DNA of 64,000 bases from Octopus sinensis (Eukaryota), in assembly GCF_006345805.1 (NCBI RefSeq), contig NC_043002.1, positions 1,860,001 to 1,924,000 on the forward strand, in the 5' to 3' direction. Position 1 is the first letter of the stretch. Each line of letters opens with the position of its first letter. Under the pieces are notes generated by a model. It saw only the letters and a list, made by a program, of their open reading frames with translations, did no database searches and had not been told where the DNA came from. Shown one piece after another: positions 6,944 to 57,556 of this stretch. The translations under genes were made by a program, and so were the position numbers.

Positions 6944-8652
6944 CCGTTGGTAGGGGCCGAGGTTATGGTTTATCACAATGTAAATCCGTGCGTGAGCTCC
7001 AGATAAACTGGTTTTTACAGAGTGATGTATAAGAGAGAAGTTAAGATAATGGTCATTCCATATAAGTCCTTTCTTATAGCAAATTTGGCTTACAGCTGTT
7101 GCCAGGAGTCCTCATACAATGGTTTACTCAATTCACCAAGAGACCAATTGAGTAAACGTATCTGCAATGATTCCTGCGAAAAGTTGGAAGCGAAATTTAC
7201 GATAAGAATGGAAGTGTATGGAATTACCGTTATTTTAATTTGTCTGTTATATATATATATATCACTCTGTACATAGATACATATATATATATATGCTAGG
7301 TGCCCCAGCATGGCCCCAGTCCAATGGCTGAAACAAGTAAAAGATAGATACATACAAACACACACACGCACACACACACACATGTACCGATACAAATATA
7401 CTCACACAGATAAAACAATGTACCAATACTGTTGCATCGTTAGCGTTGCGTAGCAGCTGGTGATGTCTAGACAGCTTCTCTTTCGCTTATTCGTGTTTCT
7501 TTAGTCTGCATCGGTAGTTACACTGAAGTTTCAGAGAATTATATTATTTTCTGTCGACTCTAAGAAATAGATTTAAATTTGTATTCAAATCCTGTAGTTG
7601 GGTGGAAATGACGTGTCTTATTTTAAGATGACAGAGGTGACAAAAATTCGAACAGCGGACGTTTATGAAATACAGTCAAGATTACGAGTTATCAAAGGGT
7701 TTAATTGGATTTTTAAATATTAATTTGTGGCTTGATAATGTTGTGTTGGTTCCTTCATCTAAAGGTAAATAGCAACTCTTAATACTCCCTTCGTAATTGC
7801 CGATATTTGCCGATAGTTGTGTGTCGTCTGGATCTAACACTGTAACTTACTAAGTGAATTGTTTAGTGTTGTATGAAATATCCAATGAGCATTGCTCTTT
7901 ATTTTGATGAGTTGCAATTTTCTGCCACCAAGCGCAGCGAGATTATTCTAAAGGGTGACCAGGTTTGAGCACTTGGTATGCTTTATTCACTTACTTCTTT
8001 CGAGGCCTACAACCTGCTAAATATTCGTCTCCCTTATTAAAACCTGTTAGGTGTTTGCGTTTCTTGTTTTTACGTACAAAAGATTATTCATGCGATAAAT
8101 AGGGATCAATAAATATGGAAGAATGTAATAAGCAAATGAATCGGTATAAATGGCTAATCCCTTGAAATAATGGCCATAACATAACGTTGTCGACACATTG
8201 AAACCATTGGAAGAATAAAGAATATATAGAGAAAAGATATTACATGGAATGCCTTGTAACATGTGCAGAGAGATAAACTTTGATAGATTAGAAGACATTC
8301 TAAGAAAGATATTATGTAAGGTTCTTAGACGATGTCTTCAGATTAGACGGAACAGTTCTCTACAGACTTACTTAGCACTAGAATGGATGGCGTATTGTTA
8401 TGTTTTGGTTCGAGTAAGAAGATGATTCTTTTGTAACAGTGCCAGGCAAATCCTATTAGAATGATTAGATAAAGAAACAAAATCACAGACCAGAAGAATG
8501 TTAAATGAACCGAAACAATATTCACAACGCTTTAATTGTTGGTTTCGATGTTCATGTGGTCGTAACAACAAAATGTTACCGAAATCTCTTCAACTCTACG
8601 AACGTTATATATGTATATGTGTGTGTGTACGTGCTTGAGTGGGTGTTATATG

Positions 8653-8856: not shown

Positions 8857-8869
8857 CTGTTTTACTGTT

Positions 8870-9305
8870 TTACTGTTTTACTTTTTCAGCCATTTGACTG
8901 CGGCCATGCTGGAACACCGCCTTTAGTCGAACAAATCGACCCCAAGACCTATTCTTTGTAAGCCTAGTACTTATTCTATCGGCCTCTTTTACTGAACCGC
9001 TAATTTAAGGGGACGTAAACACACCAGCATCGGTTGTCAAGCGATGTTGGGTGACAAACACAGACACACAAACATATACTCACATACATACACACACACA
9101 CACACACGCACACACACACATACCCCCCATACATATATATATATATACGACGTGCTTCTTTCAGTATACCAAATCCACTCACAGGGCTTTGGTCGGCCCG
9201 AGGCTATAGTAGAAGACACTTGCCGAAGGTACAACGCAGTGGGACTGAACCTGGAACCATGTGGTTCGTAAGCAAGCTACTTAACACACACCCACTGCTG
9301 CACCC
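8870..9305 (-). mobile_element. tRNA-derived SINE, family 1 (dominant family in this window)
   Basis: Reverse complement matches copies at 48725-49144 and 57160-57556: tRNA-like head, internal (TA)/(CA) tract, GGCGGTG..CCAGCATGGCCGCAGTCAAATGGCTGAAA tail. Confidence 0.9.
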
Positions 9306-9831
9306 ATATATATATATAGTTATAATGATTCTAAAAAGAAATAAAGGAAAAGTGAAATAAAAGTAAATAGCGAGTTTTAGGAATTTAGCAATATACGTCT
9401 TAAAACACTCAAATATCAAAAGATTAATAAAGAATTTGTATACACACACACATGCACACAAACACACACACACACACACAACACGCACACACACACATAC
9501 CCCCCATACATATATATATATATACGACGTGCTTCTTTCAGTATACCAAATCCACTCACAGGGCTTTGGTCGGCCCGAGGCTATAGTAGAAGACACTTGC
9601 CGAAGGTACAACGCAGTGGGACTGAACCTGGAACCATGTGGTTCGTAAGCAAGCTACTTAACACACACCCACTGCTGCACCCATATATATATATAGTTAT
9701 AATGATTCTAAAAAGAAATAAAGGAAAAGTGAAATAAAAGTAAATAGCGAGTTTTAGGAATTTAGCAATATACGTCTTAAAACACTCAAATATCAAAAGA
9801 TTAAATAAAGAATTTGTATACACACACACAT

Positions 9832-11106: not shown

Positions 11107-13266
11107 TCACGAACATATGTGCAAGACACACCCCATTAAGATCTGCAAACAAATCTAAGTGTCGAATCCCTAGAAATAGAAAATGTCTCATAAGGAAAAT
11201 TAAAAGAATCAACAAAAAGATCAACATGCTGAAATACTGTCAACAGAAACACACCAACCTGACTGCCATCTCGTCGCTAGAGATTAAAAAACATAAACTC
11301 CAAAACAACATGATGTCTATCATCAATAGTCAGCGAAGAGCTGAAGAGGCCTGGGCCATTGAGAAGATCAAACTCAATCCCAAAGTGTTCTTTTCATTTG
11401 CAAAAAAACACAGAGCCACTGGTTCTACTGTTGGCCCTCTGATTGATGAAAATGGTACTCTTCAAGACAATGCCAAAACCATGGGAGAGATATTGCAGAA
11501 ACAATATTGCTCTGTTTTCAGCAATCCTGATATGACTGATCTGGGCTGTATCAGTGATGTTACTCCCCAATACACTTTATCGGACATAAAATTTGGCGCT
11601 CCTGATGTCTTAGCAGCAATAAAGGAAATGAAGCGTAATTCAGCAGTAGGTCCTGATAGGTTCCCTGCTTGTGTCTTGAAGATGTGTCAAAACCAACTTG
11701 CACCTCCTCTAGCCAATCTGTGGCGGAACTCACTGGATGCTGGATATATACCAGAAGACCTTCTATTCCAGTCTGTTGTCCCAGTTTTCAAAAAAGGAAA
11801 CAAATCGCTTGCTGTGAATTACCGTCCAATCTCACTCACCTCTCATAACATCAAGGTATTTGAGAGGGTGCTGCGATCGCGTATGACTCACTTCCTTGAG
11901 AGTCATAATATGCTGAACCCCAACCAGCATGGATTCCGTAATGGGAGAGATTGCCTGACGCAGCTACTGCATCATTTTGATGACATTTTGAGAGCCTTGG
12001 GAGAGGGTTCCAACACTGATGTCATCTACCTTGATTTCAGCAAGGCCTTTGACAGGGTTGATCATAAGATCCTTCTGAGAAAGCTGTCCAATATTGGTGT
12101 CACTGGAAAGCTGCTGCAGTGGATCAAGTGCTTTCTGTCTAACAGAACCCAACATGTTGTAGTCGAAGGAGTCAAATCCAGCCCAGCCAAAGTCAGCAGT
12201 TGTGTCCCACAAGGCACTGTGTTGGGCCCACTTCTCTTCATCATCTACATAAATGATATTACTGACACCATCAAACACAGTAACATCAGAACCTTCGCTG
12301 ATGATTCCAAGCTCCAGAAGGTCATCAATGGCGTGGATGACCGAATAAACCTTCAGTCAGACCTACTGGCTGTTGTCCAATGGGCGGAAAAGAATAACAT
12401 GTTGTTAAATGAAGACAAATTTGAACTGATCCACTTTGGAAGAGAGGACACTCTGAAACTCCCATACTCTCTTCCTTCTGGAGAAATTCTCATGGCATCC
12501 AACAACATCAGAGACCTGGGAGTAACAGTGGACAACAACATAAGCTGGGCTACACATACAAGCAGCAAACTTGACATGGCTCGCAGAATGTGTTCCTGGA
12601 TTCTCAGAACCTTCCAGTCGAGAGATTCCCACGCTATTATCCTTCTCTTCTCCACTTTTGCCCGACCCCACCTTGAATACTGCTGTCCACTGTGGTCTCC
12701 CTACACAAAACAAAATATTATGAGAATTGAAGCTCCCCAAAGGTCAATCACAAAAAAGATAGATGGCATGTCAGACCTTGACTACTGGGGTAGACTAGAG
12801 AAGCTGAAATTGTATTCACTCCAACGACGCCGTCAACGCTACATTATCTGTATGATGTGGAAAATATTCCACCAGCACTGTCCGAATGATGTTGGCATCA
12901 CCTTCAAAATGCATCCAAGGCTAGGACCACGTGCCATCCGTCCACAACAAAAATCTAAATCGCATCACATAACGACAATACGGCACAACTATTTCACCTC
13001 AATTGGACCTGCTCTCTTCAACATTACACCAGGGCACGTCAAAAAAGAAACTGACCACACAAAATTCAAGAAGTCTTTGGACAAATTCCTTCAAACAGTA
13101 CCGGACAAACCACCCACACCCGGATATGTCTCCGCAAACAATAACTCTCTGCTCGAATGGGCTTGGTGCCCAAATCCTGAACTGAAAGACTTCGCCAGGA
13201 GGTGCTATTAAGTTAGACATGGCCTGGGCCAATACTGGCCAAAACCTTTCTAAGTTATTCTAAGTT
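11107..13266 (+). mobile_element. CR1-type LINE, 5'-truncated, lying in a (TA)n tract
   Basis: Open frame from about 11106 to 13211; 3' UTR with CATGGCC plus stem-loop and (TTCTAAG)x2 tail; TA-rich tracts at 10718-11106 and 13267-13550. Confidence 0.93.
11226..13211 (+). CDS. LINE ORF2 reverse transcriptase (endonuclease part lost by truncation), 661 aa, uninterrupted
   Basis: NYRPISLTS, YLDFSKAFDRVDH, VPQGTVLGPLLF, FADDSKL, RPHLEYCCPLWSP, LYSLQRRR. Confidence 0.9.
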   Translation: MLKYCQQKHTNLTAISSLEIKKHKLQNNMMSIINSQRRAEEAWAIEKIKLNPKVFFSFAKKHRATGSTVGPLIDENGTLQDNAKTMGEILQKQYCSVFSNPDMTDLGCISDVTPQYTLSDIKFGAPDVLAAIKEMKRNSAVGPDRFPACVLKMCQNQLAPPLANLWRNSLDAGYIPEDLLFQSVVPVFKKGNKSLAVNYRPISLTSHNIKVFERVLRSRMTHFLESHNMLNPNQHGFRNGRDCLTQLLHHFDDILRALGEGSNTDVIYLDFSKAFDRVDHKILLRKLSNIGVTGKLLQWIKCFLSNRTQHVVVEGVKSSPAKVSSCVPQGTVLGPLLFIIYINDITDTIKHSNIRTFADDSKLQKVINGVDDRINLQSDLLAVVQWAEKNNMLLNEDKFELIHFGREDTLKLPYSLPSGEILMASNNIRDLGVTVDNNISWATHTSSKLDMARRMCSWILRTFQSRDSHAIILLFSTFARPHLEYCCPLWSPYTKQNIMRIEAPQRSITKKIDGMSDLDYWGRLEKLKLYSLQRRRQRYIICMMWKIFHQHCPNDVGITFKMHPRLGPRAIRPQQKSKSHHITTIRHNYFTSIGPALFNITPGHVKKETDHTKFKKSLDKFLQTVPDKPPTPGYVSANNNSLLEWAWCPNPELKDFARRCY

Positions 13267-13283
13267 ATAAATATATATATATA

Positions 13284-17805: not shown

Positions 17806-17999
17806 GATATATACACCGGCGAAAATATATTTAAGACCGACGATAAAAGTTCTATTTCTTACAAAATATTTTGTTACTAACACCATACAAATTATTTATA
17901 TCTTTTACACCTTATGCAAAATTTATTTTCCTTTTGAATGATGCAAACAATTTTTATACAACTTGAAGAATTCTAATGCTAAATTAATATATATTTCTT

Positions 18000-18155
18000 T
18001 ACTGCCCACAAGCGGCTAAACATAGAGGGGACAAACAAGGACAGACAAACGGATTAAGTCGATTACATCGACCCCAGTGCGTAACTGGTGCTTAATTTAT
18101 CGACCCCGAAAGGATGAAAGGCAAAGTCGACCTCGGCGGAATTTGAACTCAGAAG
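18000..18155 (-). mobile_element. SINE family 2 fragment
   Basis: Core GACTTTGCCTTTCATCCTTTCGGGGTCGATAAATTAAG shared with 36850-37072. Confidence 0.75.
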
Positions 18156-18777
18156 GTAATATAAACGTTTCAAATGTACTGGCAAAATTAGTTTAAGACC
18201 ATGTAATATGTATGCAATTTTTTTGGCTAAAGTGGGTGGTCACACAACGAGCCTAAATGCACCATATAAAGTTATAATTTAATGTTATTATACAATTTAT
18301 TAATAATGGGAAAACAACGTAGTCTTAGTCCAGTCACGAGAGCAAAAATCGTATATTACAGCAAAAAGTTTCCTTTAGGAACATCAGCAAGCAACTAAAG
18401 TGCAGTAAACCGGCTTGCGTGCAAGCGTGGAATTTATACTCGGAGACTGGTCAATATAAAGATCGGCAAAGGACTAGTAACAGAATATTTTGTAAGAAAT
18501 AGAACTTTTATCATCGGTCTTAAATTTATTTTCGCCAGTGTGTATATTATATATATATAATGTATATAATATGATAATTTTAATGGAGATAACCTGCAGT
18601 ATATAGTACAACATTTTTGTCTCCGTACAGGAGCTAAGTATTAATAAAATGTGGTATACGATAAAAATTTGTCTTAAAACATTCAGACAAGAAAATTCAG
18701 ATGTAGCACATGATTATTATTCCATACGAATATACACATATTTATGTTAAGAGTTTCATGATAAAAATATAGAAATA

Positions 18778-27289: not shown

Positions 27290-27490
27290 TCTTATACTTT
27301 TTTACTTGTTTCATTCACTGTTCTGTGGCCATTCTGGAGTACTACCTTGCAGGATTTTGTTGAAGAAATTAATCCCAGTATGTATTTGTTAAGCATCGTA
27401 CGCATTATATCGGCCTTTTGCCGAACCGCTAGGTAACGGGGACGTGAACGAAACAATGTCGGGTTTCAAGTGGTGGAGGAGGACCAACAC
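27290..27490 (-). mobile_element. SINE family 1, diverged 3' half
   Basis: TTTTACTTGTTTCA..TGTGGCCATTCTGGAG..TTTTGCCGAACCGCTAGGTAACGGGGACGT. Confidence 0.65.
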
Positions 27491-27544
27491 AAATGCATGC
27501 ACAAACACACCTATAGTTATACACATCTACACATACATACATAC

Positions 27545-27657
27545 AAAAATACCTTGTTGTTGATGTTGAAATTCCAATGAAGGAGCCTTGGATCGAGACG
27601 AGAAACCGGCTCTTCCTCTATTGACGAGAAATCTTAAAATATAATTGAACAATGATA
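27545..27657 (+). mobile_element. About 110-bp short element embedded in (CATA)n; second copy at 63563-63671
   Basis: CATAC|AAAAATACC...GATGTTGAAATTCCAATGAAGGAGCCTTGGATC...GAAACCGGCTC...GAACAATGA|TATACATAC. Confidence 0.7.
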
Positions 27658-31567: not shown

Positions 31568-33980
31568 TGTTTCTTTATTAGCCACACAGAGCTGCACACA
31601 GACAGAACAAATTACAAGGTAGAGCTTTTCTTTTTGGGGTAAAAAAAGGGGGTTGGTTTTCGATCAAAAGGGATCGTAAAAGGAAAGAAAGAGGACAAAA
31701 AACGGGGAGGATTTTTAAAAAAAGGGGGGGGAGAAAGAAAAAAAAGGGGAGAGGGAAAAAAAGTTGATCAATAGGGATCGTAATCACAGAAATGTCAAAA
31801 TGAAGTGTAAAGGGGAGGACAGGTGAGGTTTACCCGTGGAAGGAAAAGCCTACGGAAAAGACCACGGTAACCTCGATCAATGAAGTCACATGTTATATTT
31901 CTTTTTCTTTTTTTTTCCAAATAAGCAACTCTGTATTAATTTTTACGGTTCATAGAATCATAGTCAAGGTGGCTTCGTCATTCATACGTGCCATCCTTGC
32001 TACATTCACCCATCTTTTTTTAAAACATTCACTAGACAAAACTTGCCTCTCTACTCTCACTTTCCTCTTCAAGTGATACTTGAAGAAGTTGATGAGAGAT
32101 TGACCAGAGAGGAAAGTGTTTGTCTCTAATCCTTTCAGGCGCGTCCACCAGATACATTCTTTCGCCATAGCCACAAGTATGATGAAAATAGCTCTTCCTT
32201 CCCGTTTGAAGGAAGGAGGCGTGACGATATTAACGATAGACTCGGCTGATAAACCGACACGTCCCACACGTGACAGCAGTCGTTCGACATAAGCCCACAG
32301 GTCGGAAATTGGTGGACACTGCACGATTGCGTGCAGAGCGGTTTCGTCGCTCTGCCCGCATCTCGGGCAGGTCGGCCCCGTGTTTCTCGAGCCATGCCTA
32401 TAGAGCTTATCCCGAACGGGTAGCGCTTCTCGGTAGCACCGCCAGGCCAGGGATCTCTGGAAGTTGTCCATAGGTCCCGGACCGAAAGTCGTTTGAAACA
32501 GGCGGGTCAGGTATTCCTCGTCGACGCTCAGGCTCGCCCCGAGATCGTCGTCGTACCTCCCCTCCACTAATCCCCTATAGAATGTTTTGGTTGTGTTGAA
32601 GTCACTCAAGGTCGACCCGGGACGGCAGAGTTGCTTGAGAGCAACGCGACACTCGCGGTGCCATTCGCCCTTCCTCGGCCTCTTTTTGATCCACTACTGC
32701 AGTTCGGTCATGGAGACGAGTTGCGGGAATGCGTGCCTCACAAACGGCGACCACACCTGTTCACCGTCGTTTACATAGATCCGGAGATGTCGCAGTCTCA
32801 GCGCGTGTCTGCGCATCATCAACCACGGCATGCCCAGCCCTCCTTTTAACGGGTGTTGACAGCAAATGGATCGCCTGACCATCGGGACGCATCCTTTCCA
32901 CAAGAAGCGGAAGAGAATGCGTTCTAGTTTGGTGATGGTAGGGTCGGGACAAGGTACGACGGTCAGGCGGTAGTAGATGATGGACGCGATGTACGTTTTC
33001 GCCACCTCCGCCCGACCTTTTAGGGACAGTTTCCTCTCGGCCCATTGCTGGGCGAGAGTGACCACCCTACTCGTTATCTCGTTCCAGTTCTTCTCCATTT
33101 GAAGGTCCGGACCGAACCAGACCCCGAGCAACTCAACCGGGCCGTCTGTCCAGCGTCCCACGACGGAGGTACTGGTGGACGGCATGGGCTTGCTTCTCCA
33201 GGTGCCGAGCCGCAAGCCCACTGACTTTTCCCGGTTGAGTTTTGCTCCTGTCACCGCTTCGTAGTCTTTCAGTGTCTCGCCGACCCGCTCGATGTGCTCT
33301 TGGCTTGACACTATGACGGTGACGTCGTCCGCGTATGCAGACACGCTCGTTCCGCATCCCAATTATCGCGGGATGCCCCTCAGAGTCGCCAGCTTCCGCA
33401 GTAGTGGCTCAAGAGTCAATACGTATAGAAGCGCCGAGAGGGGGAATTCCTGACGGACCGAACGTGCAATGTCGAAAGGTCTCGATAGATGTCCATTTAC
33501 GCGAATTACCGAACGGATGCCTCTGTACAAGGCAGCTATCCAGACGTGAAAGAGGGGACCGAAACCAGCCGCTCTCAGGACTGCCTCCAAGTATCGATGG
33601 TCTACCCTATCGAAGGCTTTCGATTGATCCAAGTTGATCAGGGCCCCACCCATGCCAAGTCCGTTAACTACCCTGTCTATGATGTAGCGCATCAGATGGA
33701 GGTTGTCATGGATGCTCCGGCCCGGCACAGCGCACGTTTGTGCGTTGTCGACCAGTTTCTCGATGACAAGCGCCAACCTCTTGGCTAACACCTTTGTCAA
33801 AATTTTCAGGTCTGCATTGAGCAGAGTGATTGGTCTAAAGTTATCTATAATGTTCCCCTTGTTTGGATCTTTCTTCAGCAGTGTTACAGCTCCTCGACTC
33901 ACAAAACCGGGTATGCTCCCGTTTTGCTGCCAGTTGCAGTATACCACTGCCAAGACGTCTCCAAACAAGTCTGGCATACA
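31567..33980 (-). mobile_element. Tx1/L1-group LINE, 5'-truncated at the start of RT, with (TCTA)n on both flanks
   Basis: One frame 33977 to 31950 with two premature stops (33363, 32694): NFRPITLLNAD, INLDQSKAFDRVDH, AYADDVT, LSLKGRAEV, CPRCGQSDETALHAIVQC; 3' UTR ends AATAAAGAAACATA|TCTATCTA. Confidence 0.93.
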
Positions 33981-36849: not shown

Positions 36850-36852
<3 letters not shown>

Positions 36853-37072
36853 CTTTACTACCCACAAGGGGCTAAACACAGAGGAGACAAACAAGGACAG
36901 ACAAAGCGATTAAGTCGATTCCATCGACCCCAGTGCGTAACTGGTATTTAATTTATCGACTCCGAAAGGATGAAAGGCAAAGTCAACCTCAGCGGAATTT
37001 GAACTCAGAACGTAACAGCAGACGAAATACGGCTTCGCATTTCATCCGGCGTGCCAACGTTTCTGCCAGCCG
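36850..37072 (-). mobile_element. SINE family 2, near full length
   Basis: Head GCTGGCAGAAACGTTGGCAC..GAGTTCAAATTCC (B-box-like), core CCTTTCATCCTTTCGGAGTCGATAAAT, tail CCCCTTGTGGGTAGTAAAGAAA. Confidence 0.85.
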
Positions 37073-37090
37073 TGTATATATATATACATG

Positions 37091-37121
<31 letters not shown>

Positions 37122-37149
37122 CATATATGGATGAAATATGTGTATCTCC

Positions 37150-37350
37150 GTGTTTATTCCACATCTCCAATTCACAACCGGTGTTGGTGACTTTATGTTC
37201 CCGTAAATTAGCGGTTCGGAAAAAGACTCGATGGAGTAAGTGCAACACTCGAAAACAAGGTACTGGGTCCGATTTCTTCAACAAAGATTTTTCCAAGTCG
37301 GTGCCCCAGCATGGCCGCAGGCTAACGACAGAAACAACTGAAGGTAAAAG
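37150..37350 (+). mobile_element. SINE family 1, diverged 3' half
   Basis: TTAGCGGTTCGG..GGTGCCCCAGCATGGCCGCAG..GAAACAA..GTAAAAG. Confidence 0.65.
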
Positions 37351-43957: not shown

Positions 43958-44723
43958 TAAAGCTAGATTTTCTATAAGCACAGTGGAATTAGAATTTAAA
44001 TAATTAAAAATGAGTAGTGTATACCTATCACTTTTTAAGATCCTCAAATTCTATTCAGGTAAAGTTTATTTTTTTATATTCCATTTTCTTCGGAAATACG
44101 GATCAGTTAATATATTTAATTAGATTTAATATTCTCGAGTATGTCTCCTGTATTAGTAAAATTAATCTCCTTACATACATAAACTAGTTGACGTGAACAA
44201 CTGGATTATTGCATACGAGAGTTAGGAATGAACGAAGATAATTAAAAACTACATATACATTTATCTTAAAGAAGCTAGTCTGCTTAGTACAGGAAGCACA
44301 TAGAATGGGCTTTAGCTTATAACCATAATCATTTTGTATGAGCTTATAATTTTTACAAATATTACATGATTCACTATGAAATATATACCGTGTGTGAGTG
44401 TGTGTGGTTGGGGTTTATTACATCACAAGAGGCAGGGTACTCTGAGTTTCAGTCTTAGCTGAACTGTTCATGTGCGCCGTCAACAACCAAGCTAAGACTG
44501 ACTCTCACAGTCGGCTGTCCACCTTGATATAGTAAATATATACGTGTCTATCTACTCTACCCAACGTATTCACTTCTATCCCAGGTAATACCTGCTGCTG
44601 TACTATGTAAAGTATGCTATTGATATAGTTTACTGGTTACATTACTATGTGTGTATAGAAAAAAATGTATGTGTCTGCACACACACACACACGCACACTT
44701 ACATATATATATATATATATATA

Positions 44724-46886
44724 TGATTGATTTTGATTGATTGATTGATTGATTCTAGTTTCAGCTCATGAGCTGTGGCCATGCTGGGGCACCGCCATTT
44801 GGTGTTGCTACATGGTTTTACTTCACGAAAGCTTTTTAGCAACTGCCATTTGGTGCATGAGAGAGTTCAATGCAGCTGCCCTCATCTGCCCCTCCTGCCG
44901 TGAAGTTGGTTCATCTGGGATACCTGACAGGAAGAGATCCAGTTTCATTTTAAAGACATCTGCATCCACCCCATGCAGGTCTCTTAGGTTCTTCGGGAGG
45001 ATATTGAAGAGCTGTGGGCCTCGGAAGCCCAGGCTATCACAGTATCTTGTCCTACATCTTGATGGCAAATTTGGAGTCCTAGGCACCACACAGCGGCGCC
45101 CAGTTCTGGCATTTGTGGAACTCTCGATGCCAAAGTTTGGGGCAAGTCCCTCCAGGATCTTCCAGATGTATATTATGGCATATTTTTCCCGCCTACGCTC
45201 CAAGGAATATAGTTTTAATCTCTTGAGTCTTTCCCAGTAGCTTATATTCTGCATAGAGGCTATCTTCTTCGTGTAGCTACGTTGGATCGCCTCAAGTTCT
45301 GTGATCAACTTGACACTGGATGGTGACCATAACTGAGAGCAATAGTCAAAGTGGCTTAGGACAAGTGTCTTCCAGAGGACCATCATGGTTTTTTGTTCTC
45401 TTGTTCTAAAGGTTCTGAGAATCCATCCGGCCAGTCGTCTACATTTCATTGCCAATTTAGCAACATGTACACGAAAGGTTGCGTCATCACTCATGTAAAT
45501 ACCCAGGTCACGCACTGATTGTGCCTCTGGGATTGCAATCCCTCCGGGTCCAGCGTATTCATTGGGTATTGCATTTAGTTTTGCATGCTGATAGTATAAA
45601 GCTTGAAACTTTTCAGCATTGAACTGCATGCTATTCTTTTCAGCCCACTTGTATATTTTGTCCAGCTCACATTGCAGGCGTTTAGTGTCCTCAGGGTTCT
45701 GTATTGCCTGTGAAACTTTTGTATCATTTGCATAACTTGTGATCGTGGCTCTCTGTGTGGCTGAGGGCATGTCTGAGAGGGCCATTATGAACAGTAGTGG
45801 TCCCAAAACAGTGCCATGCGGAACACCGCTCACTATTTGCGTGTTAATGGAAGTGGCTACTACCACCTGACTTCTATCTTTCAGAAAGTCATGAAGCCAA
45901 CCTCCCAGTTTTCCAACTATGTTGAGATCACGCAGTTTGTGACATATCATTCCATGATCGACTTTATCAAAGGCCTTTGCAAAGTCGAGATATATCACTT
46001 CCACATTTGAGTGGTTGAGCAGTCGTTTCAGCACCCAGTCATAGTGTTGTAGGAGCTGAGTTAGGCAGCTTCTTCCTGGTCGGAAACCATGTTGGGTGTC
46101 GGGCAGCAGGTCATTTTCTTCAAGGAAGGTGATCCGTTTCCTTCTGACTATTCGTTCCATGACCTTGCTGATGTGTGAGGTCAGAGAGATAGGTCTGTAG
46201 TTCTTGGCCTCCGCTCTGCTACCTCCTTTATGAATAGGGCATATTTTACCTTCCTTCAGTTTTCTTGGAAGTTTGCCAGCTGCAAGGAAGCTCTGAAAGA
46301 GGAACTGCAATGGTCTTGCTAGGACGCTCTTACATACTTTTAGGAGGATTGCCGGGAATCCATCGGGGCCAGTAGCTGAGTCTGTTTTCATTTCATCTAT
46401 AGCCTTTATTACATCGTCTTCCTTTATATCGATGTAATTTATCGTCGCCGTCTCTGATTTTATATCTGCAGTGGTAAAGAAGTCAGTTGGATTGGTGATT
46501 TGGAAATGCCCAAGGGGTGGAGTGAAAACACTCTTGAATTGCTCATTCAGTATTTCACTTACCCTCATTGGTTTTCCTGTGAGTGTGCCATCCTTTTCAA
46601 GGAGTGGCCCTATCCTACAGTGCACCGTAGCTGTTTCTTTGGCATACCTGTAGAAAGCTCTGGGGTTAGATTTTATGTTGTCTATAGCCCAGGCTTCTTT
46701 GTCTGCTCTTTCCTTTTCATGGGAGAGTTGCAGACATTTTTCAATTTCCAACAGTTTTATTTTCAGGCGGGACTTTTCACTGCTTTCAATTTGTTTGTTT
46801 AGGCGATTTGAAATTTCTGTACGCCGTCTCATTAAAATTTTCCTCTATCTGGGGATTTTGTTCTTGTGTACAGTGGCCTTTCTCTC
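44724..46886 (-). mobile_element. CR1-type LINE (second subfamily), 5'-truncated, (ATCA)n tail, lying in (TA)n
   Basis: 669-aa ORF; 3' UTR GGCGGTGCCCCAGCATGGCCACAGCTCATGAGCTGAAACTAG then (AATC)n; TA runs on both flanks. Confidence 0.93.
44823..46832 (-). pseudogene. LINE ORF2 RT, open but with mutated catalytic motifs
   Basis: YLDFAKAFDKVDH intact, but VPHGT (for QG) and SYANDTK (for YADD). Confidence 0.85.
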
Positions 46887-47356
46887 TATATATATATATT
46901 TAAATAATGAGGGAGACAAATTAATATTAATTTTAATATCAATTTAAAACCAGTAGTCTAGCATACAAAAAATCTGAGAAATCAGAGAAAATTCTAATAT
47001 ATGTGTATATTGGCAGGGCAAGACTGCTAGGTAGTCGGCCGTATGCTAGAAATAGATCATCAACGATCAAACTACAAAGAAAGTTCTCTAGGGGAAAAAT
47101 TCAGCGAACACCAGAACCAAATTTGGCGGGCAGGACAGATAAAGTATGGGAGTTTAGTTCACAGGTGATCTAAACGATTAGATACGTCAGGTAAGTGCTG
47201 TAGCTAGGGCTCCAAGGTTGTAGCCGAGACAGTAGTTATGGAGTCATTGCAGATTTCCGATGCAGTGGATATAGAATTATTAAAGAGGACAACAAACATT
47301 AAGCCGAGGCAAACATCCCAAGTCGAATACAATATTATTATGAGAAAAGATTCAAA

Positions 47357-48724: not shown

Positions 48725-49144
48725 TTACTCTTTTACTCTTTTACTTGTTTCAGTCATTTCACTGCGGCCATGCTGGAGCACCGCCTTTAGTCGAGCAAAT
48801 CGACCCCGGGACTTATTCTTTGTAAGCCCAGTACTTATTCTAACGGTCTCTTTTGCCGAACCGCTAAGTGACGGTGACGTAAACACACCATCATCGGTTG
48901 TCAAGCAATGCTAGGGGGACAAACACAGACACACAAACACACACACACATACATATACATATATATATATATACATATATACGACAGGCTTCTTTCAGTT
49001 TCCGTCTACCAAATCCACTCACAAGGCATTGGTCAGCCCGGGGCTATAGCAGAAGACACTTGCCCAAGATGCCACGCAGCGAGACTGAACCCAGAACCAT
49101 GTGGTTGGTTAGCAAGCTACTTACCACACAGCCACTCCTGCGCC
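48725..49144 (-). mobile_element. SINE family 1, full length
   Basis: GGCGCAGGAGTGGCTGTGTGGTAAG head at 49144, (GTAAAAGA)n tail at 48725. Confidence 0.93.
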
Positions 49145-49627: not shown

Positions 49628-50655
49628 TGTTGTCAATTCGTTCGTCTACCTAGTAAGCTCTGTTCAAAATGATGGAAATCTTGATACAGAAATACAGCTG
49701 CAAATTCAAAGGCCAGCAAAGGCATTTGGTGGCTTGGAGTCCCGCGTTTGGCGCAAGTGACATATAAATAAGAATACAAAGCTGGCTCTTTACAAATCCT
49801 TTGTCTTACCATCCCTGTTGTATTCCTGTGAAACTTGGACTTGTTATGAAAGTCGTTTTAAATTGTTAGAACAATTCCACAAAAAATGCCTTCATTGCAT
49901 TTTAAAAATTAAATGGAGTTCTTTTACTCCAAACACAGATGTCCTTGCATCTGCGAGCATCACCTCAATTAAAGCTACGATTTTGAAGAGCCAATTGAGA
50001 TGGTGTGGCCATATTGCTCGAATGGCAGATGAACGGAAACAGCTGTTTTATGGTGAGCTTGCAGAGGGGAACGCTGTCGGCGTAAACCTAAAAAAAGGTT
50101 TAAAGATGACATAAGGACTATTATGAAGTCACTTGGAATGGTTCCAGAAGATATAGAAACCTTTGCTTCGGATCGAGTTGGATGGCGAACAAAGGTGTGG
50201 AGTGGAGTGAAAGCATCTGAAGAGGCCGGGATAACACAAGAAAGATTCAAAAGAGATCTAAGGAAGAATGTAACGATCGAGAAGGTGAATGACGATGACC
50301 TTTCTTTTGTGCAGTCTGAGACAGACCATGCCTGGCCATGCTGGCCTCAAATCTTATCTGCGAACGCATGGAAAACGAACCTCCACCAAATATTCTGCCT
50401 ATACGTCTGTGCACAACATTGACTGCAGTGTATGCCAGAAGGTTTGTAAATTCAATGAAAGTCTCAAAAGAGATTTTAAATTCCACAAAGAGCAGAATTT
50501 ATCTGCAGCTCTTGGTAGTTGAAATCGGAGGTACAATTTATGGGGGTGTCTTTTCAGAATACTGTCTGGGTTGAAGAGCCACATCAAATGCCATGATGGT
50601 GCTAACGTGTAGGTACAGGAGTTGGTCAATCTTTGCATAAGGAGTAGACAACTAC
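49628..50655 (+). mobile_element. RTE-clade LINE 3' fragment with three C-terminal C2H2 finger remnants
   Basis: LLYSCETWT, QLRWCGHIARM, QLFYGEL; CAV*DRPC..HAGLKSYLRTH, CSVCQKVC..LKRDFKFH, YNLWG..SGLKSHIKCH. Confidence 0.85.
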
Positions 50656-50699
<44 letters not shown>

Positions 50700-50703
<4 letters not shown>

Positions 50704-50966
50704 CTTTTACTGGTTTCAGCCCAGGGCTGAGGTCATGCTGGTGCACCCAGTGTATGCGATATTGTTTTTGGTGAAGTAGCGAGTTAGGCGGAGCTGATCT
50801 TCTTTGCGTCTCATTTCGCGATGTGAGTTCATCTGGTGTCTATATATATATATATGGAGAGGTTTCTATCTCCGCCCAACTCGCTACTTTACCAAAAACA
50901 ATATCGGAAACTACACGGGGTGCACCAGCATGACCTCAGCCCTGGGCTGAGACCAGTAAAAGATAA
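50700..50966. mobile_element. MITE-like element, about 95-bp TIRs, in (TA)n
   Basis: TATCTTTTACTGGTTTCAGCCCAGGGCTGAGG...GGCGGAG (50701-50793) vs inverted copy 50870-50965. Confidence 0.85.
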
Positions 50967-50984
50967 TATATATATATTTGTCTT

Positions 50985-51185
50985 TTATTTCTCTTTTATT
51001 TGTTTCTGTCATTTGACTGCGGCCATGCTGGAGCACCGCCTTTAGTCGAGCAAATCGACGCCAGCACTTATTCTTTGGAAGTCTAGTACTTATTCTATCG
51101 GTCTTTTTTGCCAAGCCGCTACGTTACGGGGACGTAAACACACTACCAACGGGTGACGAGCGATGGTGGAGGGCCAAAGGCACAC
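50985..51185 (-). mobile_element. SINE family 1, 3' half
   Basis: GTCATTTGACTGCGGCCATGCTGGAGCACCGCCTTTAGTCGAGCAAATCGAC. Confidence 0.8.
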
Positions 51186-51304
51186 ACACACACATATATA
51201 TATACATATATATACATATACGTATATATATACATATATACGTGTATCTATGCATAGATATGTATTTACACACACACACACATATATATATACATATATA
51301 TATA

Positions 51305-55371: not shown

Positions 55372-55527
55372 GGCGCAGCAGTGGCTGTGTAGCTGGCTTA
55401 CCAACCACATGGTTCCGAGTTCAATCCCACTACCTGGCACCTTGGGCAAGTGTCTCTTACTATAGCCTCGGGCCGACCCAAACCCTTGTGAGTGGATTTG
55501 ATAGACGGAAACTGAAAGAAGACTGTC

Positions 55528-55530
<3 letters not shown>
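55372..55530 (+). mobile_element. SINE family 1 head
   Basis: GGCGCAGCAGTGGCTGTG..GAGTTCAATCCC..CCTTGGGCAAGTG. Confidence 0.85.
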
Positions 55531-55674: not shown

Positions 55675-56775
55675 TGACTTCATTTTCGTATTTGTCAGCT
55701 TCCTTAAAGATTGAAAACAGTCTTTTGTTTCGTTCGTGATCTGTGGCTGTTTGTATTAGCTTTCCCTGCTTCCGAAGTAGGTATTTCCGTAGTTCTAGCA
55801 TGTCAGATAAAGGTGTCAGTGCCAAGCAGAAAAGGAGTGGAGAGTGTGTCTCCCTTTAATATTCCTCTTCTAATGGGGGTAGCTTTGGTTTCTATGAGTC
55901 CCTCTTTTGTCTGGAGCTATAGCACTGTCTGCCATTTATTCATGGAATGTTTTATATATTTTATGATTGTTGGTGCTTCCTTATTCATGGCTAGTATTTC
56001 TAGGATACATGTTTGGGAATACTATCAAAAGCCTTTCGGTAATCGATCCAGGCCATAATTAGACCCATCCTCCTTCTGCAACTGTCTTTAGTTATGGCTT
56101 TATTGATCAATATCTGATCTTTACAGCCATATAAGCCCCTGCAGCATCCCTTCTGCTCTTCTGGAAGCAAGTTATTTTTTTCCAGATGCTTCTTCATTCT
56201 TTGCGATATTATTACATTAAAGGCTTTGTATATTGTAGTGAGACAAAATATCGGTCTGTAATTTTGTGGACTTGCCGTTTCAGTGGATTTGGGGAATAAG
56301 ATAGCTTTCCTTTTAGTGAGCCATTCAGGCATTGTCTCCGGCTCTGCTAGTACTTCATTAAATTCCTCAGCAAGCTAGTTATGTGTTTTTCTCGGGTATT
56401 TTAACCAGAAGTTGGGGATCTTGTCGTGCCCGGATACCTTTCATTTGCTTAGTTTTTGCAGCGCCTGGTTGACCTCTTCAGTTGCTATCGGGACGCAGGA
56501 TGGTTCAGATGCTGTGTTCATTGTTTTGATAGATCTTTTTCTGAGCTTCTCCCTTCGCTGACCATATTTCTTTACAAAATTATTCCACTTATTCTGCTGT
56601 TGGTGCTGCATTGATCTCTATTTTATTTTTGCCAAGTTCTTGGTAGAATCTTTTGGGGTTAGAGTAGAAGTGCTTGTTTTGTTCAAAGAAACGTTGGCGT
56701 TTCTCATACCGCTGGATTCTTTGTGCTTTGTCGAGGATATTTTGCTTTAGCTGTTCTTTTACCTCAGGTATACCT
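55675..56775 (-). mobile_element. Dong/R4 internal fragment (pre-RT and RT N-terminus), with internal deletion
   Basis: [70 protein letters not shown]. Confidence 0.88.
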
Positions 56776-57159
56776 TATGATTAATATTATTACTGTTGTT
56801 GTTGTTGCTATTGTTATCATTATCATCATCATCATCATTATTATGAGAGGTCCTATTCTTATGAGTGAGAGAGTGTAAAGTAATATTTCCAGGTTTATGT
56901 TCATTTGAAGCCATTATTAATTTTATGCGATCGAGTTTCTTTTCTTCTTTGTCTTTTTACTCTTTGAAAAATGGTGAAGAGGCAGAGGCAGGAAACCGAA
57001 GGCCTCGCAGTCATTTAAAATTAAAATTAACATTATCCATAAGTATGAATGATGTTTTCTATTTTCTTTACTTTTAACAGTGGAGGAGAAACAAAGAGGG
57101 GAAGAGATTTAGTGATGGGAAGGGGGGAAGGTTTCTTACGTGTTTAGGTTCCCATTCAG

Positions 57160-57556
57160 TGTGGTAAGTAGCTTGCTTACCAACCACATGGTTCCGGGTT
57201 CAGTCCCACTGCGTGGCACCTTGGGCAAGTGTCTTCTACTATAGCCTCGGGCTGACCAAAGCCTTGTGAGTGGATTTGGTAGACGGAAACTGAAAGAAGC
57301 CCGTCGTATATATGTATATATATGTGTGTGTATGTGTGTATACGTTTGTGTGTCTGTGTTTGTCCCCCCAACATCGCTTGACAACCGACGCTGGTGTGTT
57401 TACGTCCCCGTAACTTAGCGGTTCGGCAAAAGAGACCGATAGAATAAGTACTACGCTTACAAAGAATAAGTCCTGGGGTCGATTTGCTCGACTAATAAAG
57501 CGGTGCTCCAACATGGCCACAGTCAAATGACTGAAACAAGTAAAAGAGTAAAAGAG
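57160..57556 (+). mobile_element. SINE family 1, near full length
   Basis: GTGTGGTAAGTAGCTTGC..GGTTCAGTCCC..CATGGCCACAGTCAAATGACTGAAACAAGTAAAAGAGTAAAAGAG. Confidence 0.92.

What the first reader, a model, noticed from the sequence alone, without database searches (positions are those of the whole stretch)
44755..44796. CR1 LINE and the dominant SINE share a 3' end with a covarying stem-loop
Seen: LINE 3' UTR GGCGGTGCCCCAGCATGGCCA-CAGCT-CATG-AGCTG-AAACTAG versus SINE GCGGTGCTCCAACATGGCCA-CAGTC-AAAT-GACTG-AAACAAG (57500-57540). Other SINE copies keep the stem through G-U pairs (CAGTC/GGCTG near 7318 and 8890). Known: SINEs borrow the 3' tail of a stringent partner LINE, with a stem-loop read by the RT (eel UnaL2/UnaSINE model). 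Inference: a CR1 lineage mobilises this very abundant SINE. The terminal repeats differ ((AATC)n vs (GTAAAAGA)n), so the exact partner is probably a sister subfamily. I do not know whether this pairing has been reported.
Basis: partly seen in the sequence, partly recalled or inferred. Interest (0 to 1): 0.75.

Follow-up and report, generated by a model that had tools for sequence, protein, structure and literature searches.

The report
Octopus SINE borrows LINE 3' tail
The commonest short repeat (SINE) in this octopus-like DNA ends in the same roughly 45-base, two-hairpin sequence as a family of reverse-transcriptase-encoding LINEs, which is the classic sign that the short element is copied by the long one's enzyme; the mechanism is well known, but I found no report of this pair in octopus.

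Summary
The 42-nt motif at 44755-44796 (minus strand) is the 3' end of a 5'-truncated LINE copy (44725-46886). It recurs at the 3' end of every tail-bearing copy of the window's most frequent SINE.

Four external relatives of this LINE (87, 74, 65 and 58% ORF2 identity, one from Argonauta hians) and two tiny LINE 3' ends inside the window all carry the motif at the end of a short 3' UTR (about 10-65 nt). It is an island of near-invariance between a variable 3' UTR and a subfamily-specific microsatellite. It is therefore the LINE's native tail, not a neighbouring SINE fragment.

LINE 3' ends at 50700-50966 and locus L125 end in AGTAAAAGA, the SINE's terminal unit.

The tail folds into two hairpins. 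Only the distal 5-bp stem covaries, and modestly: 2 of 5 pairs.

LINE and SINE copies are both flanked by (TA)n.

The "CR1" label fits the architecture and published octopus annotation, but I did not test it by phylogeny. Trans-mobilisation is inferred, not shown.

Verdict: a new member of a well-known kind (stringent SINE/LINE tail sharing). Interest is moderate.

The parts
44725..46886 (-). 5'-truncated copy of a CR1-like LINE, flanked on both sides by (TA)n
   Evidence: tblastn of P0001 (1033 aa, APE+RT) aligns its residues 342-1026 to 46886..44841 at 87% identity. (TA)n lies at 46887-46900 and 44703-44724.
44823..46832 (-). Intact 669-codon remnant of ORF2 (RT domain plus C-terminal region)
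   Evidence: ORF list. Pfam RVT_1, E 1.9e-25. 4160 homologues at E<=1e-20, and full-length ones carry Exo_endo_phos_2 plus RVT_1.
44797..44822 (-). Variable part of the LINE 3' UTR
   Evidence: This stretch cannot be aligned between LINE subfamilies, and its length ranges from about 10 to 65 nt.
44777..44796 (-). Tail hairpin 1: GGC.GUGC[CCCA]GCAU.GCC, invariant in sequence
   Evidence: Predicted in the MFE and centroid of all tails but one, the short LINE 3' end at 50.7 kb, which keeps only the inner GUGC/GCAU stem. GGTGC-CCAGCATG-CC is invariant across LINE subfamilies of 58-87% aa identity. No covariation.
44762..44775 (-). Tail hairpin 2: CAGCU[CAUG]AGCUG, the covarying stem-loop of the finding
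   Evidence: Fold. Pairs 4 and 5 vary as C-G/U-A/U-G and C-G/U-A among LINE subfamilies and SINEs.
44755..44761 (-). Conserved AAAC spacer (AAACTAG) between hairpin 2 and the terminal repeat
   Evidence: GCTGAAAC is invariant in all LINE tails aligned.
44725..44754 (-). Terminal microsatellite (AATC)n of this LINE subfamily
   Evidence: Other subfamilies end in (TTAAA)n, (ATACAAG)n, AGTAAAAGAGTA and others.
50700..50840 (-). 141-nt 5'-truncated 3' end of a sister LINE subfamily ending CAGTAAAAGATAA (the SINE's terminal unit)
   Evidence: It reads ...PDELTSRNETQRRSAPPNSLLHQK, matching the ORF2 C-termini of P0002, P0003 and P0005. Tail 50710-50750 scores 52 bits. Flanked by (TA)n.
50856..50966 (+). 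Second 5'-truncated copy of the same sister LINE subfamily, head-to-head with the first
   Evidence: Inverted repeat, 66 nt at 97%. Tail 50916-50956 scores 51 bits. Reads ...SPPNSLLYQK.
57159..57555 (+).
   Evidence: blastn. Tail 57499-57540 scores 59 bits.
48726..49144 (-). Full-length SINE copy
   Evidence: Tail 48744-48785 scores 63 bits.
8863..9304 (-). Full-length SINE copy with the U-G variant of hairpin 2 and (GTAAAACA)3
   Evidence: Tail 8880-8921 scores 55 bits.
50981..51233 (-). SINE copy with the 3' module only, tail-to-tail with the short LINE end at 50856-50966
   Evidence: Tail 50999-51040 scores 63 bits.
7296..7344 (+). Tail-only retrocopy (49 nt) that cannot be assigned to SINE or LINE. 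Stem CAGUC/GGCUG
   Evidence: 57 bits. Preceded directly by (TA)n.
27290..27551 (-). Old, diverged copy of the SINE 3' module with a decayed tail
   Evidence: About 70% identity. Tail 27305-27346 scores 50.5 bits.
37097..37350 (+). Old, diverged copy of the SINE 3' module with a decayed tail
   Evidence: About 70% identity. Tail 37297-37338 scores 55 bits.
11115..13268 (+). Second, distantly related LINE (40% aa identity) with an analogous two-hairpin tail (13198-13248), (TTCTAAGTTA)2 and a (TA)n flank
   Evidence: tblastn. Sequence. The covariance model was not trained on it, yet hits its exact 3' end at 14.4 bits, E 0.0036 over the window.

Best explanation
The window comes from an octopod genome. 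A lineage of APE-type, CR1-like LINEs ends in a conserved 3' module. The module has hairpin 1 (GGC.GUGC/GCAU.GCC, fixed sequence), hairpin 2 (a 5-bp stem with a CAG...CUG base and variable inner pairs and loop), an AAAC spacer, and a subfamily-specific short tandem repeat.

The window's main SINE has a tRNA-like, CORE-type 5' module, an internal (TA)n(TG)n tract and a 189-nt 3' module. It carries the same LINE module at its very end, with the terminal unit AGTAAAAG.

Most likely mechanism: the Pol III SINE transcript presents this tail to the ORF2 protein of a partner LINE subfamily that also ends in AGTAAAAG. The reverse transcriptase recognises the hairpins, as a stringent-type LINE does. 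It then primes on the terminal repeat at a nicked (TA)n target and copies the SINE into the genome.

Shown here:
- the tail is shared;
- it is native to the LINE and conserved there;
- the two hairpins are predicted;
- hairpin 2 carries compensatory changes;
- a sister LINE subfamily has the SINE's terminal unit;
- LINE and SINE copies share (TA)n flanks;
- copies of both are 5'-truncated.

Inferred:
- recognition of the tail by the RT;
- mobilisation in trans;
- the role of the terminal repeat;
- membership of the CR1 clade.
For: 1. The motif lies at the end of a short 3' UTR in the window LINE and in relatives at 87% (L001), 74% (L125), 65% (L002, L003) and 58% (Argonauta L004, two copies) ORF2 identity.
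2. The alignment of LINE 3' ends shows conserved codons, then an unalignable UTR, then the invariant island GGTGC-CCAGCATG-CC-N-CAGC...GCTGAAAC, then divergent microsatellites. That pattern points to purifying selection on the tail.
3. SINE-LINE similarity is restricted to the last 45-55 nt, with scores of 42-59 against shuffles of 16-17 +/- 2.3.
4. L125 and the short LINE ends at 50700-50966 end in AGTAAAAGA(G)TA, as the SINE does.
5. The two-hairpin fold is the MFE and centroid of every tail but one (the short LINE 3' end at 50.7 kb), with SINE z-scores of -3.2 and -3.7. In hairpin 2, pair 4 is C-G in LINEs and U-A or U-G in SINEs, and pair 5 is U-A or C-G. A 40%-identity LINE in the window has a different 5-bp stem (GGCCA/UGGCC) at the equivalent place.
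6. In 7 of 11 cases the 3' junction abuts a (TA)>=4 run, against a 7.4% background, and the 5' flanks are also (TA)n.
7. Both element types occur as 5'-truncated copies down to 49-141 nt, as expected from target-primed reverse transcription.
8. Argonauta has the SINE's 5' module with a different 3' part but has the LINE with this tail. So the tail belongs to the LINE and was acquired by the SINE.
9. The kind is established: CORE- and V-SINEs share stem-loop tails, with compensatory changes, with CR1 LINEs in bivalves (PMC4824008, PMC4758252, PMC11481361). CR1 tails consist of a hairpin plus an 8-bp microsatellite (PMC5729268).
Against: - No LINE seen here has the SINE's own stem (CAGUC/GACUG), so the actual partner master copy has not been observed.
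- Covariation rests on two pairs and on few, related sequences. Single genomic SINE copies decay neutrally, so their mismatches and G-U pairs are weak evidence.
- Hairpin 1 has no covariation, so its structure is only predicted.
- (TA)n is common in this genome (4.3% of bases), and two of the junctions share one tract.
- There is no experimental evidence of trans-mobilisation, and activity periods were not compared.
- RTE, Dong-R4 and L1-Tx1 LINEs are also recently active in Octopus (PMC13282606).
Confidence: 0.8

Rival explanations
1. The motif beside the LINE at 44755-44796 is only a SINE fragment that happened to insert next to this one LINE copy.
For: SINE tail-only retrocopies do exist (7296-7344). 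Insertions also cluster in (TA)n tracts, for example the LINE and SINE lying tail-to-tail at 50956-50999.
Against: The motif sits at the same place, 10-65 nt after the stop codon, in six independent LINE loci from at least five subfamilies and two genera. Each is followed by its own microsatellite. The LINE versions share diagnostic bases that the SINE lacks (GGTGCCCC, stem CAGCY/RGCUG).
Confidence: 0.01
2. The transfer went the other way: the LINE lineage captured its tail from the SINE, or both took it from a third element. The tail would still serve 3'-end recognition.
For: Template switching between SINE and LINE RNAs is known. The SINE's 189-nt 3' module upstream of the tail matches no LINE sequence seen here.
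Against: The tail is present in LINEs of Argonauta and Octopus, and in recognisable form in a LINE of only 40% identity. The Argonauta copies of the SINE 5' module carry a different 3' part. This favours the LINE as the older owner. Only 22 kb of Argonauta was sampled.
Confidence: 0.05
3. The shared tail is a relic. The SINE arose from this LINE lineage's tail but is, or was during its main burst, mobilised by another LINE (for example the RTE or Dong-R4 elements active in Octopus), or the conserved island serves a function other than RT recognition, such as RNA 3'-end formation or stability.
For: Several LINE clades are recently active in Octopus vulgaris (PMC13282606), and an RTE element is the one reported as expressed in the brain (PMC9115989). 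No functional data exist for this tail.
Against: The youngest-looking SINE copies keep the whole module intact, including the terminal unit shared with LINE subfamilies. LINE and SINE copies have the same (TA)n flanks. The LINE is presumably transcribed by Pol II and the SINE by Pol III, so a shared 3'-processing role is less natural than shared recognition at reverse transcription (inference).
Confidence: 0.12

Closest known systems
Bivalve CORE- and V-SINEs paired with CR1 LINEs: BivaCORE-SINE1 and BivaV-SINE2 with CR1-14_CGi (Nishihara et al. 2016, PMC4824008); Vhc_1 with CR1-1_CGi and CR1-14_CGi (Matetovici et al. 2016, PMC4758252); Amar_SINE-2#CORE with Amar-1_LINE#CR1 (PMC11481361)
   Same: These are mollusc SINEs with a tRNA-type head and a conserved central domain. 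Their last tens of nucleotides (35-61 bp, 72-95% identity in PMC11481361) match the 3' end of a CR1-type LINE. Stem-loops with compensatory changes were used as the argument for RT recognition.
   Different: Here there are two hairpins and a (TA)n target preference, and the SINE has an internal microsatellite at a module boundary. The CR1 membership of the LINE here is untested.
Eel UnaL2 / UnaSINE1 (L2 clade; Kajikawa & Okada 2002, as summarised in PMC3747384)
   Same: A stringent-type pair: a shared 3' tail with a conserved stem-loop, and a short terminal repeat ((TGTAA)n there) thought to act in template slippage. It is the experimental model for the mechanism proposed here.
   Different: UnaL2 belongs to the L2 clade and is a vertebrate element. 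Its tail sequence is unrelated and a single hairpin was studied. Trans-mobilisation was demonstrated there and not here.
Amniote CR1 and CR1-mobilised SINEs (TguSINE1 and PittSINE, PMC5729268; the tortoise Pol III/SINE with PsCR1, from my own knowledge of Ohshima et al. 1996)
   Same: A 3' UTR hairpin proposed as the RT binding site, followed by an 8-bp microsatellite. The SINE tail is copied from a particular CR1 subfamily. The octopus SINE also ends in an 8-nt unit (AGTAAAAG).
   Different: No sequence similarity to the amniote tail (AUUCURUG repeats). The octopus LINE subfamilies use 4- to 10-nt units of many sequences.
Octopus SINEs OK, OR1 and OR2 (Ohshima & Okada 1994), and the 'tRNA-Core' SINEs that dominate Octopus repeat annotations (PMC8967140)
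   Same: The SINE here has a CORE-like segment (CTGCGTGGCACCTTGGGCAAGT...) and a tRNA-like head. It is probably one of these known families.
   Different: I could not obtain the OR1/OR2 sequences to confirm identity. No paper in the held library names a LINE partner for them. The pair table in PMC3747384 contains no octopus entry, and the label 'tRNA-Core' carries no partner suffix.

Membership tests
Stringent-type SINE/LINE pair with a common 3' tail | The SINE 3' end is homologous to the 3' end of a LINE from the same genome, and the homology is limited to the tail | tested here: met
   Local alignments are confined to the last 45-55 nt, scoring 42-59 against shuffles of 16-17 +/- 2.3. The covariance model finds 10 tails at 50-63 bits.
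Stringent-type SINE/LINE pair with a common 3' tail | The tail is the LINE's own conserved 3' end, not an adjacent insertion | tested here: met
   Present in L001, L125, L002, L003 and L004 (two copies) and in two short LINE ends in the window. It forms an invariant island between a variable UTR and a variable microsatellite.
Stringent-type SINE/LINE pair with a common 3' tail | A conserved stem-loop in the tail, supported by compensatory changes | tested here: met
   Hairpin 2 has 87% of cells paired and 2 of 5 pairs changed on both sides. The covariation score is 0.101 against 0.071, with 13 of 500 shuffles reaching it. Support is modest. Hairpin 1 is predicted only.
Stringent-type SINE/LINE pair with a common 3' tail | No poly(A); both elements end in short tandem repeats, and the true partner shares the SINE's unit | tested here: met
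   The SINE ends in (AGTAAAAG)n. L125 ends in GAGTAAAAGAGTA and the LINE ends at 50700-50966 in CAGTAAAAGATAA. The 44.7-kb copy itself ends in (AATC)n.
Stringent-type SINE/LINE pair with a common 3' tail | The LINE protein mobilises the SINE in trans, dependent on the tail | not testable with these tools
   This needs a retrotransposition assay.
Stringent-type SINE/LINE pair with a common 3' tail | Overlapping periods of activity for the SINE and the partner LINE | not tested
   Only one 64-kb window and a few short loci were available, so no genome-wide divergence profiles could be made.
CR1 clade of non-LTR retrotransposons | ORF2 with an N-terminal APE endonuclease and an RT | tested here: met
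   Full-length relatives P0001-P0003 carry PF14529/PF03372 plus PF00078. The window copy is 5'-truncated and retains only the RT and C-terminus.
CR1 clade of non-LTR retrotransposons | The RT domain groups with CR1 reference elements in a phylogeny, rather than with L2, Rex1, Jockey, RTE and others | not testable with these tools
   No labelled LINE references were available. The PDB holds only L1 and R2 proteins.

Indirect support: among the clades reported as recently active in O. vulgaris (RTE, Dong-R4, CR1, L1-Tx1, Hero, R2; PMC13282606), only CR1 fits this element's features. Those features are an APE at the N-terminus, no RTE-type C-terminus and a microsatellite tail.

From memory, the C-terminal motif LYSLERRREKYAIIYIWKILEG resembles the avian CR1 motif LFSLEKRRLRGDLI.
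CR1 clade of non-LTR retrotransposons | A 3' UTR hairpin followed by a short microsatellite, without poly(A) | tested here: met
   L2 and Rex1 share this feature, so it does not discriminate between clades.
tRNA-derived CORE-SINE | A 5' head derived from a tRNA, with Pol III A and B boxes | tested here: inconclusive
   By eye there are box-like motifs (TGGCTGTGTGG; GGTTCAGTCCC) about 45 nt apart. ARAGORN finds nothing in the window or in the consensus head, and Rfam gives no tRNA hit at E<=1.
tRNA-derived CORE-SINE | A central CORE domain | tested here: inconclusive
Published annotations call the main octopus SINEs tRNA-Core (PMC8967140). No curated CORE model was available.
UnaL2/UnaSINE1 system (L2 clade) | Sequence homology of the tail or the LINE to UnaL2 | not tested
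   No UnaL2 sequence was at hand. The resemblance lies in the mechanism only.

The most novel reading that the evidence does not exclude
This CR1-like lineage, rather than the RTE elements so far highlighted, may drive the octopus-specific SINE expansion (SINEs make up about 11.6% of the O. vulgaris genome, PMC13282606).

The SINE itself may have been created in the Octopus lineage when an older CORE-SINE acquired a tail-bearing 3' module. The Argonauta copies of the 5' module carry a different 3' part, and they diverge from the octopus SINE exactly where it has its internal (TA)n. (TA)n is also the preferred insertion site of this LINE. On this reading the partner's target preference built its own parasite.
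Probability: 0.3. Interest if true: 0.6.

Novelty: new member of a known kind. Interest (0 to 1): 0.4.

Why it matters
SINEs are the largest repeat class in Octopus genomes and are considered an octopus-specific expansion (PMC8967140, PMC13282606). In the literature I could search, no autonomous partner is named for them.

Pinning the main CORE-type SINE to one LINE lineage, through a defined 45-nt two-hairpin tail, gives three practical things:
- a concrete candidate for the enzyme behind that expansion;
- a compact RNA element for mutational tests of stringent RT recognition in an invertebrate CR1-like element;
- a search key (tail plus terminal unit) for sorting octopus SINE and LINE subfamilies and dating their co-amplification.

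The principle itself, SINEs borrowing LINE tails with covarying stem-loops, has been textbook knowledge since 1996-2002.

Tried and rejected
- Metagenome scan for GGTGCYCCAGCATGGCC. It returned 120 loci, all GC-rich bacterial chance matches with no CAG...CTGAAAC downstream.
- Exact look-up of the window's 669-aa ORF. It is not on record, so the source species could not be confirmed.
- More distant LINE relatives at about 45% identity (L126, L127). They have no tail motif after the stop codon, and a 12-bit model hit 2.4 kb downstream in L126 has no terminal repeat and is chance. The motif is therefore specific to the octopod lineage.
- tRNA detection in the SINE head with ARAGORN, on the window and on the consensus, and with Rfam at E<=1. 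Both were negative; the Rfam hits were microsatellite noise.
- PDB search for a solved CR1 or L2 relative to help with clade assignment. Only L1 ORF2p (E about 1e-23) and R2 proteins came back.
- Full-text search for the motif string CCAGCATGGCC. Only unrelated primer and gene hits.
- Literature searches for a named octopus SINE partner found none. Albertin 2015, Gilbert & Labuda 1999 and Ohshima 1996 are not held. The SINEBase supplements are not held.
- Twin priming as an explanation for the head-to-head LINE ends at 50700-50966. Rejected because both arms cover the same 3'-terminal segment rather than complementary parts.
- A model hit at 55724-55765 (E 0.38) was inspected and dismissed.
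Full report
**1. What is at the coordinates**

Read on the minus strand, 44796->44755 is GGCGGTGCCCCAGCATGGCCACAGCTCATGAGCTGAAACTAG. It is followed by (AATC)n at 44754->44725 and then by (TA)n.

Twenty-six bases upstream is the stop codon of a 669-codon ORF, 44823-46832 on the minus strand. The ORF carries a reverse-transcriptase domain (Pfam RVT_1, E 1.9e-25).

A protein search gave 4160 homologues at E<=1e-20. The full-length ones are about 1000 aa, with an N-terminal APE endonuclease (PF14529/PF03372) followed by the RT.

tblastn with the closest homologue (P0001, 1033 aa) aligns its residues 342-1026 to 46886..44841 at 87% identity. The window copy is therefore a 2.16-kb, 5'-truncated LINE insertion. 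It has (TA)n on both sides.

**2. The SINE**

blastn and alignment define a repeat with three parts:
- a 163-nt 5' module, made of a tRNA-like head and a CORE-like segment;
- an internal (TA)n(TG)n tract;
- a 189-nt 3' module.

The element ends ...GGCGGTGCTCCAGCATGGCCGCAGTCAAATGACTGAAACAAGTAAAAGAGTAAAAGAG.

Copies in the window:
- full or nearly full: 57159-57555(+), 48726-49144(-), 8863-9304(-);
- 3' module only: 50981-51233(-);
- two old 3' modules at about 70% identity: 27290-27551(-), 37097-37350(+);
- two 5' modules: 9525-9681(-), 55372-55528(+);
- a 49-nt tail-only copy: 7296-7344(+).

It is the most frequent SINE in this window. A second family has only two copies.

**3. Is the resemblance real?**

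Three tests say yes.
- A 23-nt probe with up to 3 mismatches hits 5 sites, against none in 100 shuffles.
- Local alignment of the SINE consensus with five LINE 3' ends gives scores of 42-59, against 16-17 +/- 2.3 (maximum 29) for shuffles. In every case the aligned stretch is the last 45-55 nt of both partners.
- A covariance model built from 14 tails finds ten tails in the window at 50-63 bits and nothing else of that strength.

**4.

I fetched the DNA encoding the closest ORF2 relatives. All carry the motif at the end of a short 3' UTR, roughly 10-65 nt after the stop codon, and each has its own terminal repeat.

| Locus | ORF2 identity | Tail | Terminal repeat |
|---|---|---|---|
| L001 | 87% | identical motif | contig ends |
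| L125 | 74% | ...CAGCCTGCGGGCTGAAACA | GAGTAAAAGAGTA, then (TA)n |
| L002 | 65% | ...CAGCCCTAGCGCTGAAACAA | (TTAAA)n |
| L003 | 65% | ...CAGCCTTCGCGCTGAAAC | TTATAAATGAATAAATAAATA |
| L004, Argonauta hians, two copies | 58% | ...CAGCCGGCAATGGCTGAAACTGA | (ATACAAG)n |

Aligning these 3' ends shows four zones in order:
- conserved codons (PDEPTSRQE...NSLxHQ);
- an unalignable UTR of about 10-65 nt;
- the island GGTGC-CCAGCATG-CC-N-CAGC...GCTGAAAC, invariant in all sequences;
- unrelated microsatellites.

The tail is therefore native to the LINE lineage and under constraint. The 'adjacent SINE fragment' explanation is refuted.

**5. The sister-subfamily prediction**

The 44.7-kb copy ends in (AATC)n, whereas the SINE ends in (AGTAAAAG)n. 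Two things show that LINE subfamilies with the SINE's unit exist.
- L125 ends in GAGTAAAAGAGTA. It is also the best overall match to the SINE tail, with 53 aligned columns.
- Inside the window, two short head-to-head elements at 50700-50840(-) and 50856-50966(+) read ...PDELTSRNETQRRSAPPNSLLHQK... and ...SPPNSLLYQK.... This is the ORF2 C-terminus of this LINE family. They continue into GGGTGCACCAGCATGACCTCAGCCCTGGGCTGA(A/G)ACCAGTAAAAGATAA, followed by (TA)n.

None of the LINE tails seen has the SINE's own hairpin-2 stem, so the actual master partner remains unobserved.

**6. Structure**

In all but one tail the MFE and the centroid structure are two adjacent hairpins:
- hairpin 1, GGC.GUGC[YCCA]GCAU.GCC;
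- hairpin 2, a 5-bp stem (four pairs and a six-base loop in L002 and L003) with a 3-6-nt loop.

The exception is the short LINE 3' end at 50.7 kb, whose MFE keeps the inner GUGC/GCAU stem and hairpin 2 but pairs its two ends instead of forming the outer GGC/GCC stem.

z-scores are -3.2 for the 80-nt SINE 3' segment and -3.7 for the 42-nt SINE tail. For LINE tails they range from -0.9 to -2.2.

Counting pairs on the MAFFT alignment of 14 tails gives these results.
- 87.5% of cells form standard pairs, against 21-42% when the 3' partners are slid by 1-3 columns.
- Hairpin 1 never covaries.
- In hairpin 2 the three outer pairs (C-G, A-U, G-C) are fixed.
- Pair 4 is C-G in all seven LINE tails. 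Among the seven SINE-type tails, it is U-A in three and U-G in two; the two old decayed copies lack a standard pair.
- Pair 5 is U-A (window LINE), C-G (most tails) or C.C (L002, L003).
- The covariation score is 0.101 against 0.071, and 13 of 500 shuffles reach it.

This is genuine but modest support. Mismatches in single decayed SINE copies say little.

Independent support comes from the second LINE in the window, 11115-13268(+), which is 40% identical to P0001. Its 3' end is GGAGGTGCT...ACATGGCC-TG-GGCCA-ATAC-TGGCC-AAAAC, followed by (TTCTAAGTTA)2 and (TA)n. The model was not trained on it, yet hits its exact 3' end (14.4 bits, E 0.0036 over the window). Its distal stem has a wholly different sequence at the equivalent position.

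Relatives at about 45% identity from other sources lack the motif.

**7. Shared insertion behaviour**

Seven of eleven tails are followed directly by a (TA)>=4 run. The chance of that at a random position is 7.4%, and two of the junctions share one tract.

The 5' junctions of the LINE copy, of both short LINE ends, of three SINE copies and of the tail-only copy are also (TA)n.

Both element types occur as strongly 5'-truncated copies.

This fits a single endonuclease/RT machinery acting on (TA)n targets. (TA)n is, however, abundant here (4.3% of bases).

**8. Direction of transfer**

The Argonauta locus holds five copies of the SINE's 5' module (positions 51-163, 86-91% identity). After ...GAAAGAAGCCCGTCG they continue with an unrelated 3' part. 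That break point is exactly where the octopus SINE has its internal (TA)n(TG)n.

Argonauta nevertheless has the LINE with this tail. On this small sample, the tail is ancestral in the LINE. The Octopus SINE is a chimera that gained a tail-bearing 3' module.

**9. Mechanism (inferred)**

By analogy with stringent-type LINEs (review PMC3747384; UnaL2/UnaSINE1), CR1 tails (PMC5729268) and the bivalve CORE/V-SINE-CR1 pairs (PMC4824008, PMC4758252, PMC11481361), I infer the following.
- The ORF2 protein of a LINE subfamily ending in AGTAAAAG recognises the two-hairpin module on the Pol III SINE transcript.
- It primes reverse transcription on the terminal repeat at a nicked (TA)n site.

The LINE is presumably a Pol II transcript and the SINE a Pol III transcript. 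A function common to both 3' ends is therefore most simply recognition at reverse transcription.

**10. What is not established**

- *CR1 membership.* The architecture fits: APE plus RT, no poly(A), hairpin plus microsatellite. Among the clades reported as recently active in O. vulgaris (RTE, Dong-R4, CR1, L1-Tx1, Hero, R2; PMC13282606), only CR1 fits. From memory, the C-terminal motif LYSLERRREKYAIIYIWKILEG resembles the avian CR1 motif LFSLEKRRLRGDLI and not the L2 motif LHWLPV..RI.FK. No labelled references were available for a phylogeny, and the PDB offers only L1 and R2.
- *tRNA origin of the head.* ARAGORN and Rfam do not confirm it.
- *Source species.* Not confirmed.

**11. Novelty**

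The kind is long known. For octopus I found no named partner.
- The SINE/LINE pair table in PMC3747384 has no octopus entry.
- Octopus repeat papers list 'tRNA-Core' and 'tRNA-Deu' SINEs without a partner (PMC8967140, PMC13282606).
- The octopus LINE paper discusses an RTE element and names no SINE partner (PMC9115989).

Repbase, Dfam and the 1994 and 1999 primary papers could not be consulted, so prior annotation cannot be excluded.

I rate this a new member of a known kind, of moderate interest.

Noticed in passing
window 11115-13268 (+): A second, distantly related LINE copy (40% aa identity to P0001 over residues 335-1027). It has its own two-hairpin tail (13198-13248), (TTCTAAGTTA)2, and a very long (TA)n tract downstream.
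   Followed up: partly
window 50700-51233: A cluster in one (TA)n tract. Two 111-141-nt 5'-truncated LINE 3' ends lie head-to-head, separated by (TA)7; the arms are 97% complementary over 66 nt. A SINE 3' module abuts tail-to-tail. Twin priming does not fit, because both arms cover the same segment. In these copies the ORF2 frame shows no stop codon before the tail.
   Followed up: partly
window, the flanks of all LINE and SINE copies listed in parts: (TA)n lies at both the 5' and 3' junctions. Seven of 11 3' junctions abut one, against a 7.4% background. This suggests that the LINE endonuclease prefers TA microsatellites, or that the tracts are generated at insertion.
   Followed up: partly
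L004 75-187, 12669-12781, 13677-13789, 15033-15145, 15415-15511; window 55372-55528: Argonauta hians carries the SINE's 5' module with a different 3' part, breaking exactly where the octopus SINE has its internal microsatellite. The window also has a 5'-module-only copy followed by (TA)n. The SINE therefore looks like a modular chimera.
   Followed up: partly
window 9148-9304 and 9525-9681 (-): Two identical copies of the SINE 5' module, sharing the same upstream flank and the same 6-nt deletion. This indicates a local tandem duplication of about 377 bp rather than two insertions.
   Followed up: no
window 36850-37075 (-), 17994-18159 (-); L002 3235-3291: A second SINE family with a tRNA-like head, ending ...GCCCCTTGTGGGTAGTAAAGAAA. 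It has a different tail from the one studied here. Its presence in the flank of L002 suggests that this metagenome contig is octopod DNA.
   Followed up: no
window 49818-50422 (+): ORF fragments with an RTE-like LINE C-terminus (…LRWCGHIARMADERKQLFYGEL…; the assignment is from memory of the RTE/BovB motif).
   Followed up: no
window 20778-21428 (+), 33315-33953 (-), 56018-56494 (-), 4653-5186 (+): Further weak RT-homologous fragments (22-31% identity to P0001), probably old LINE remnants of other clades.
   Followed up: no
SINE 3' module, for example window 57471-57490: A predicted extra hairpin (GUCGA[UUUGC]UCGAC) lies just upstream of the shared tail in the SINE. It is absent from the LINE 3' UTRs seen here.
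   Followed up: no
L127 5210-5430: A LINE relative at about 45% identity has a tandem array of a roughly 22-nt unit (GCACGCAATGCTAATGGTACA) directly after its stop codon.
   Followed up: no
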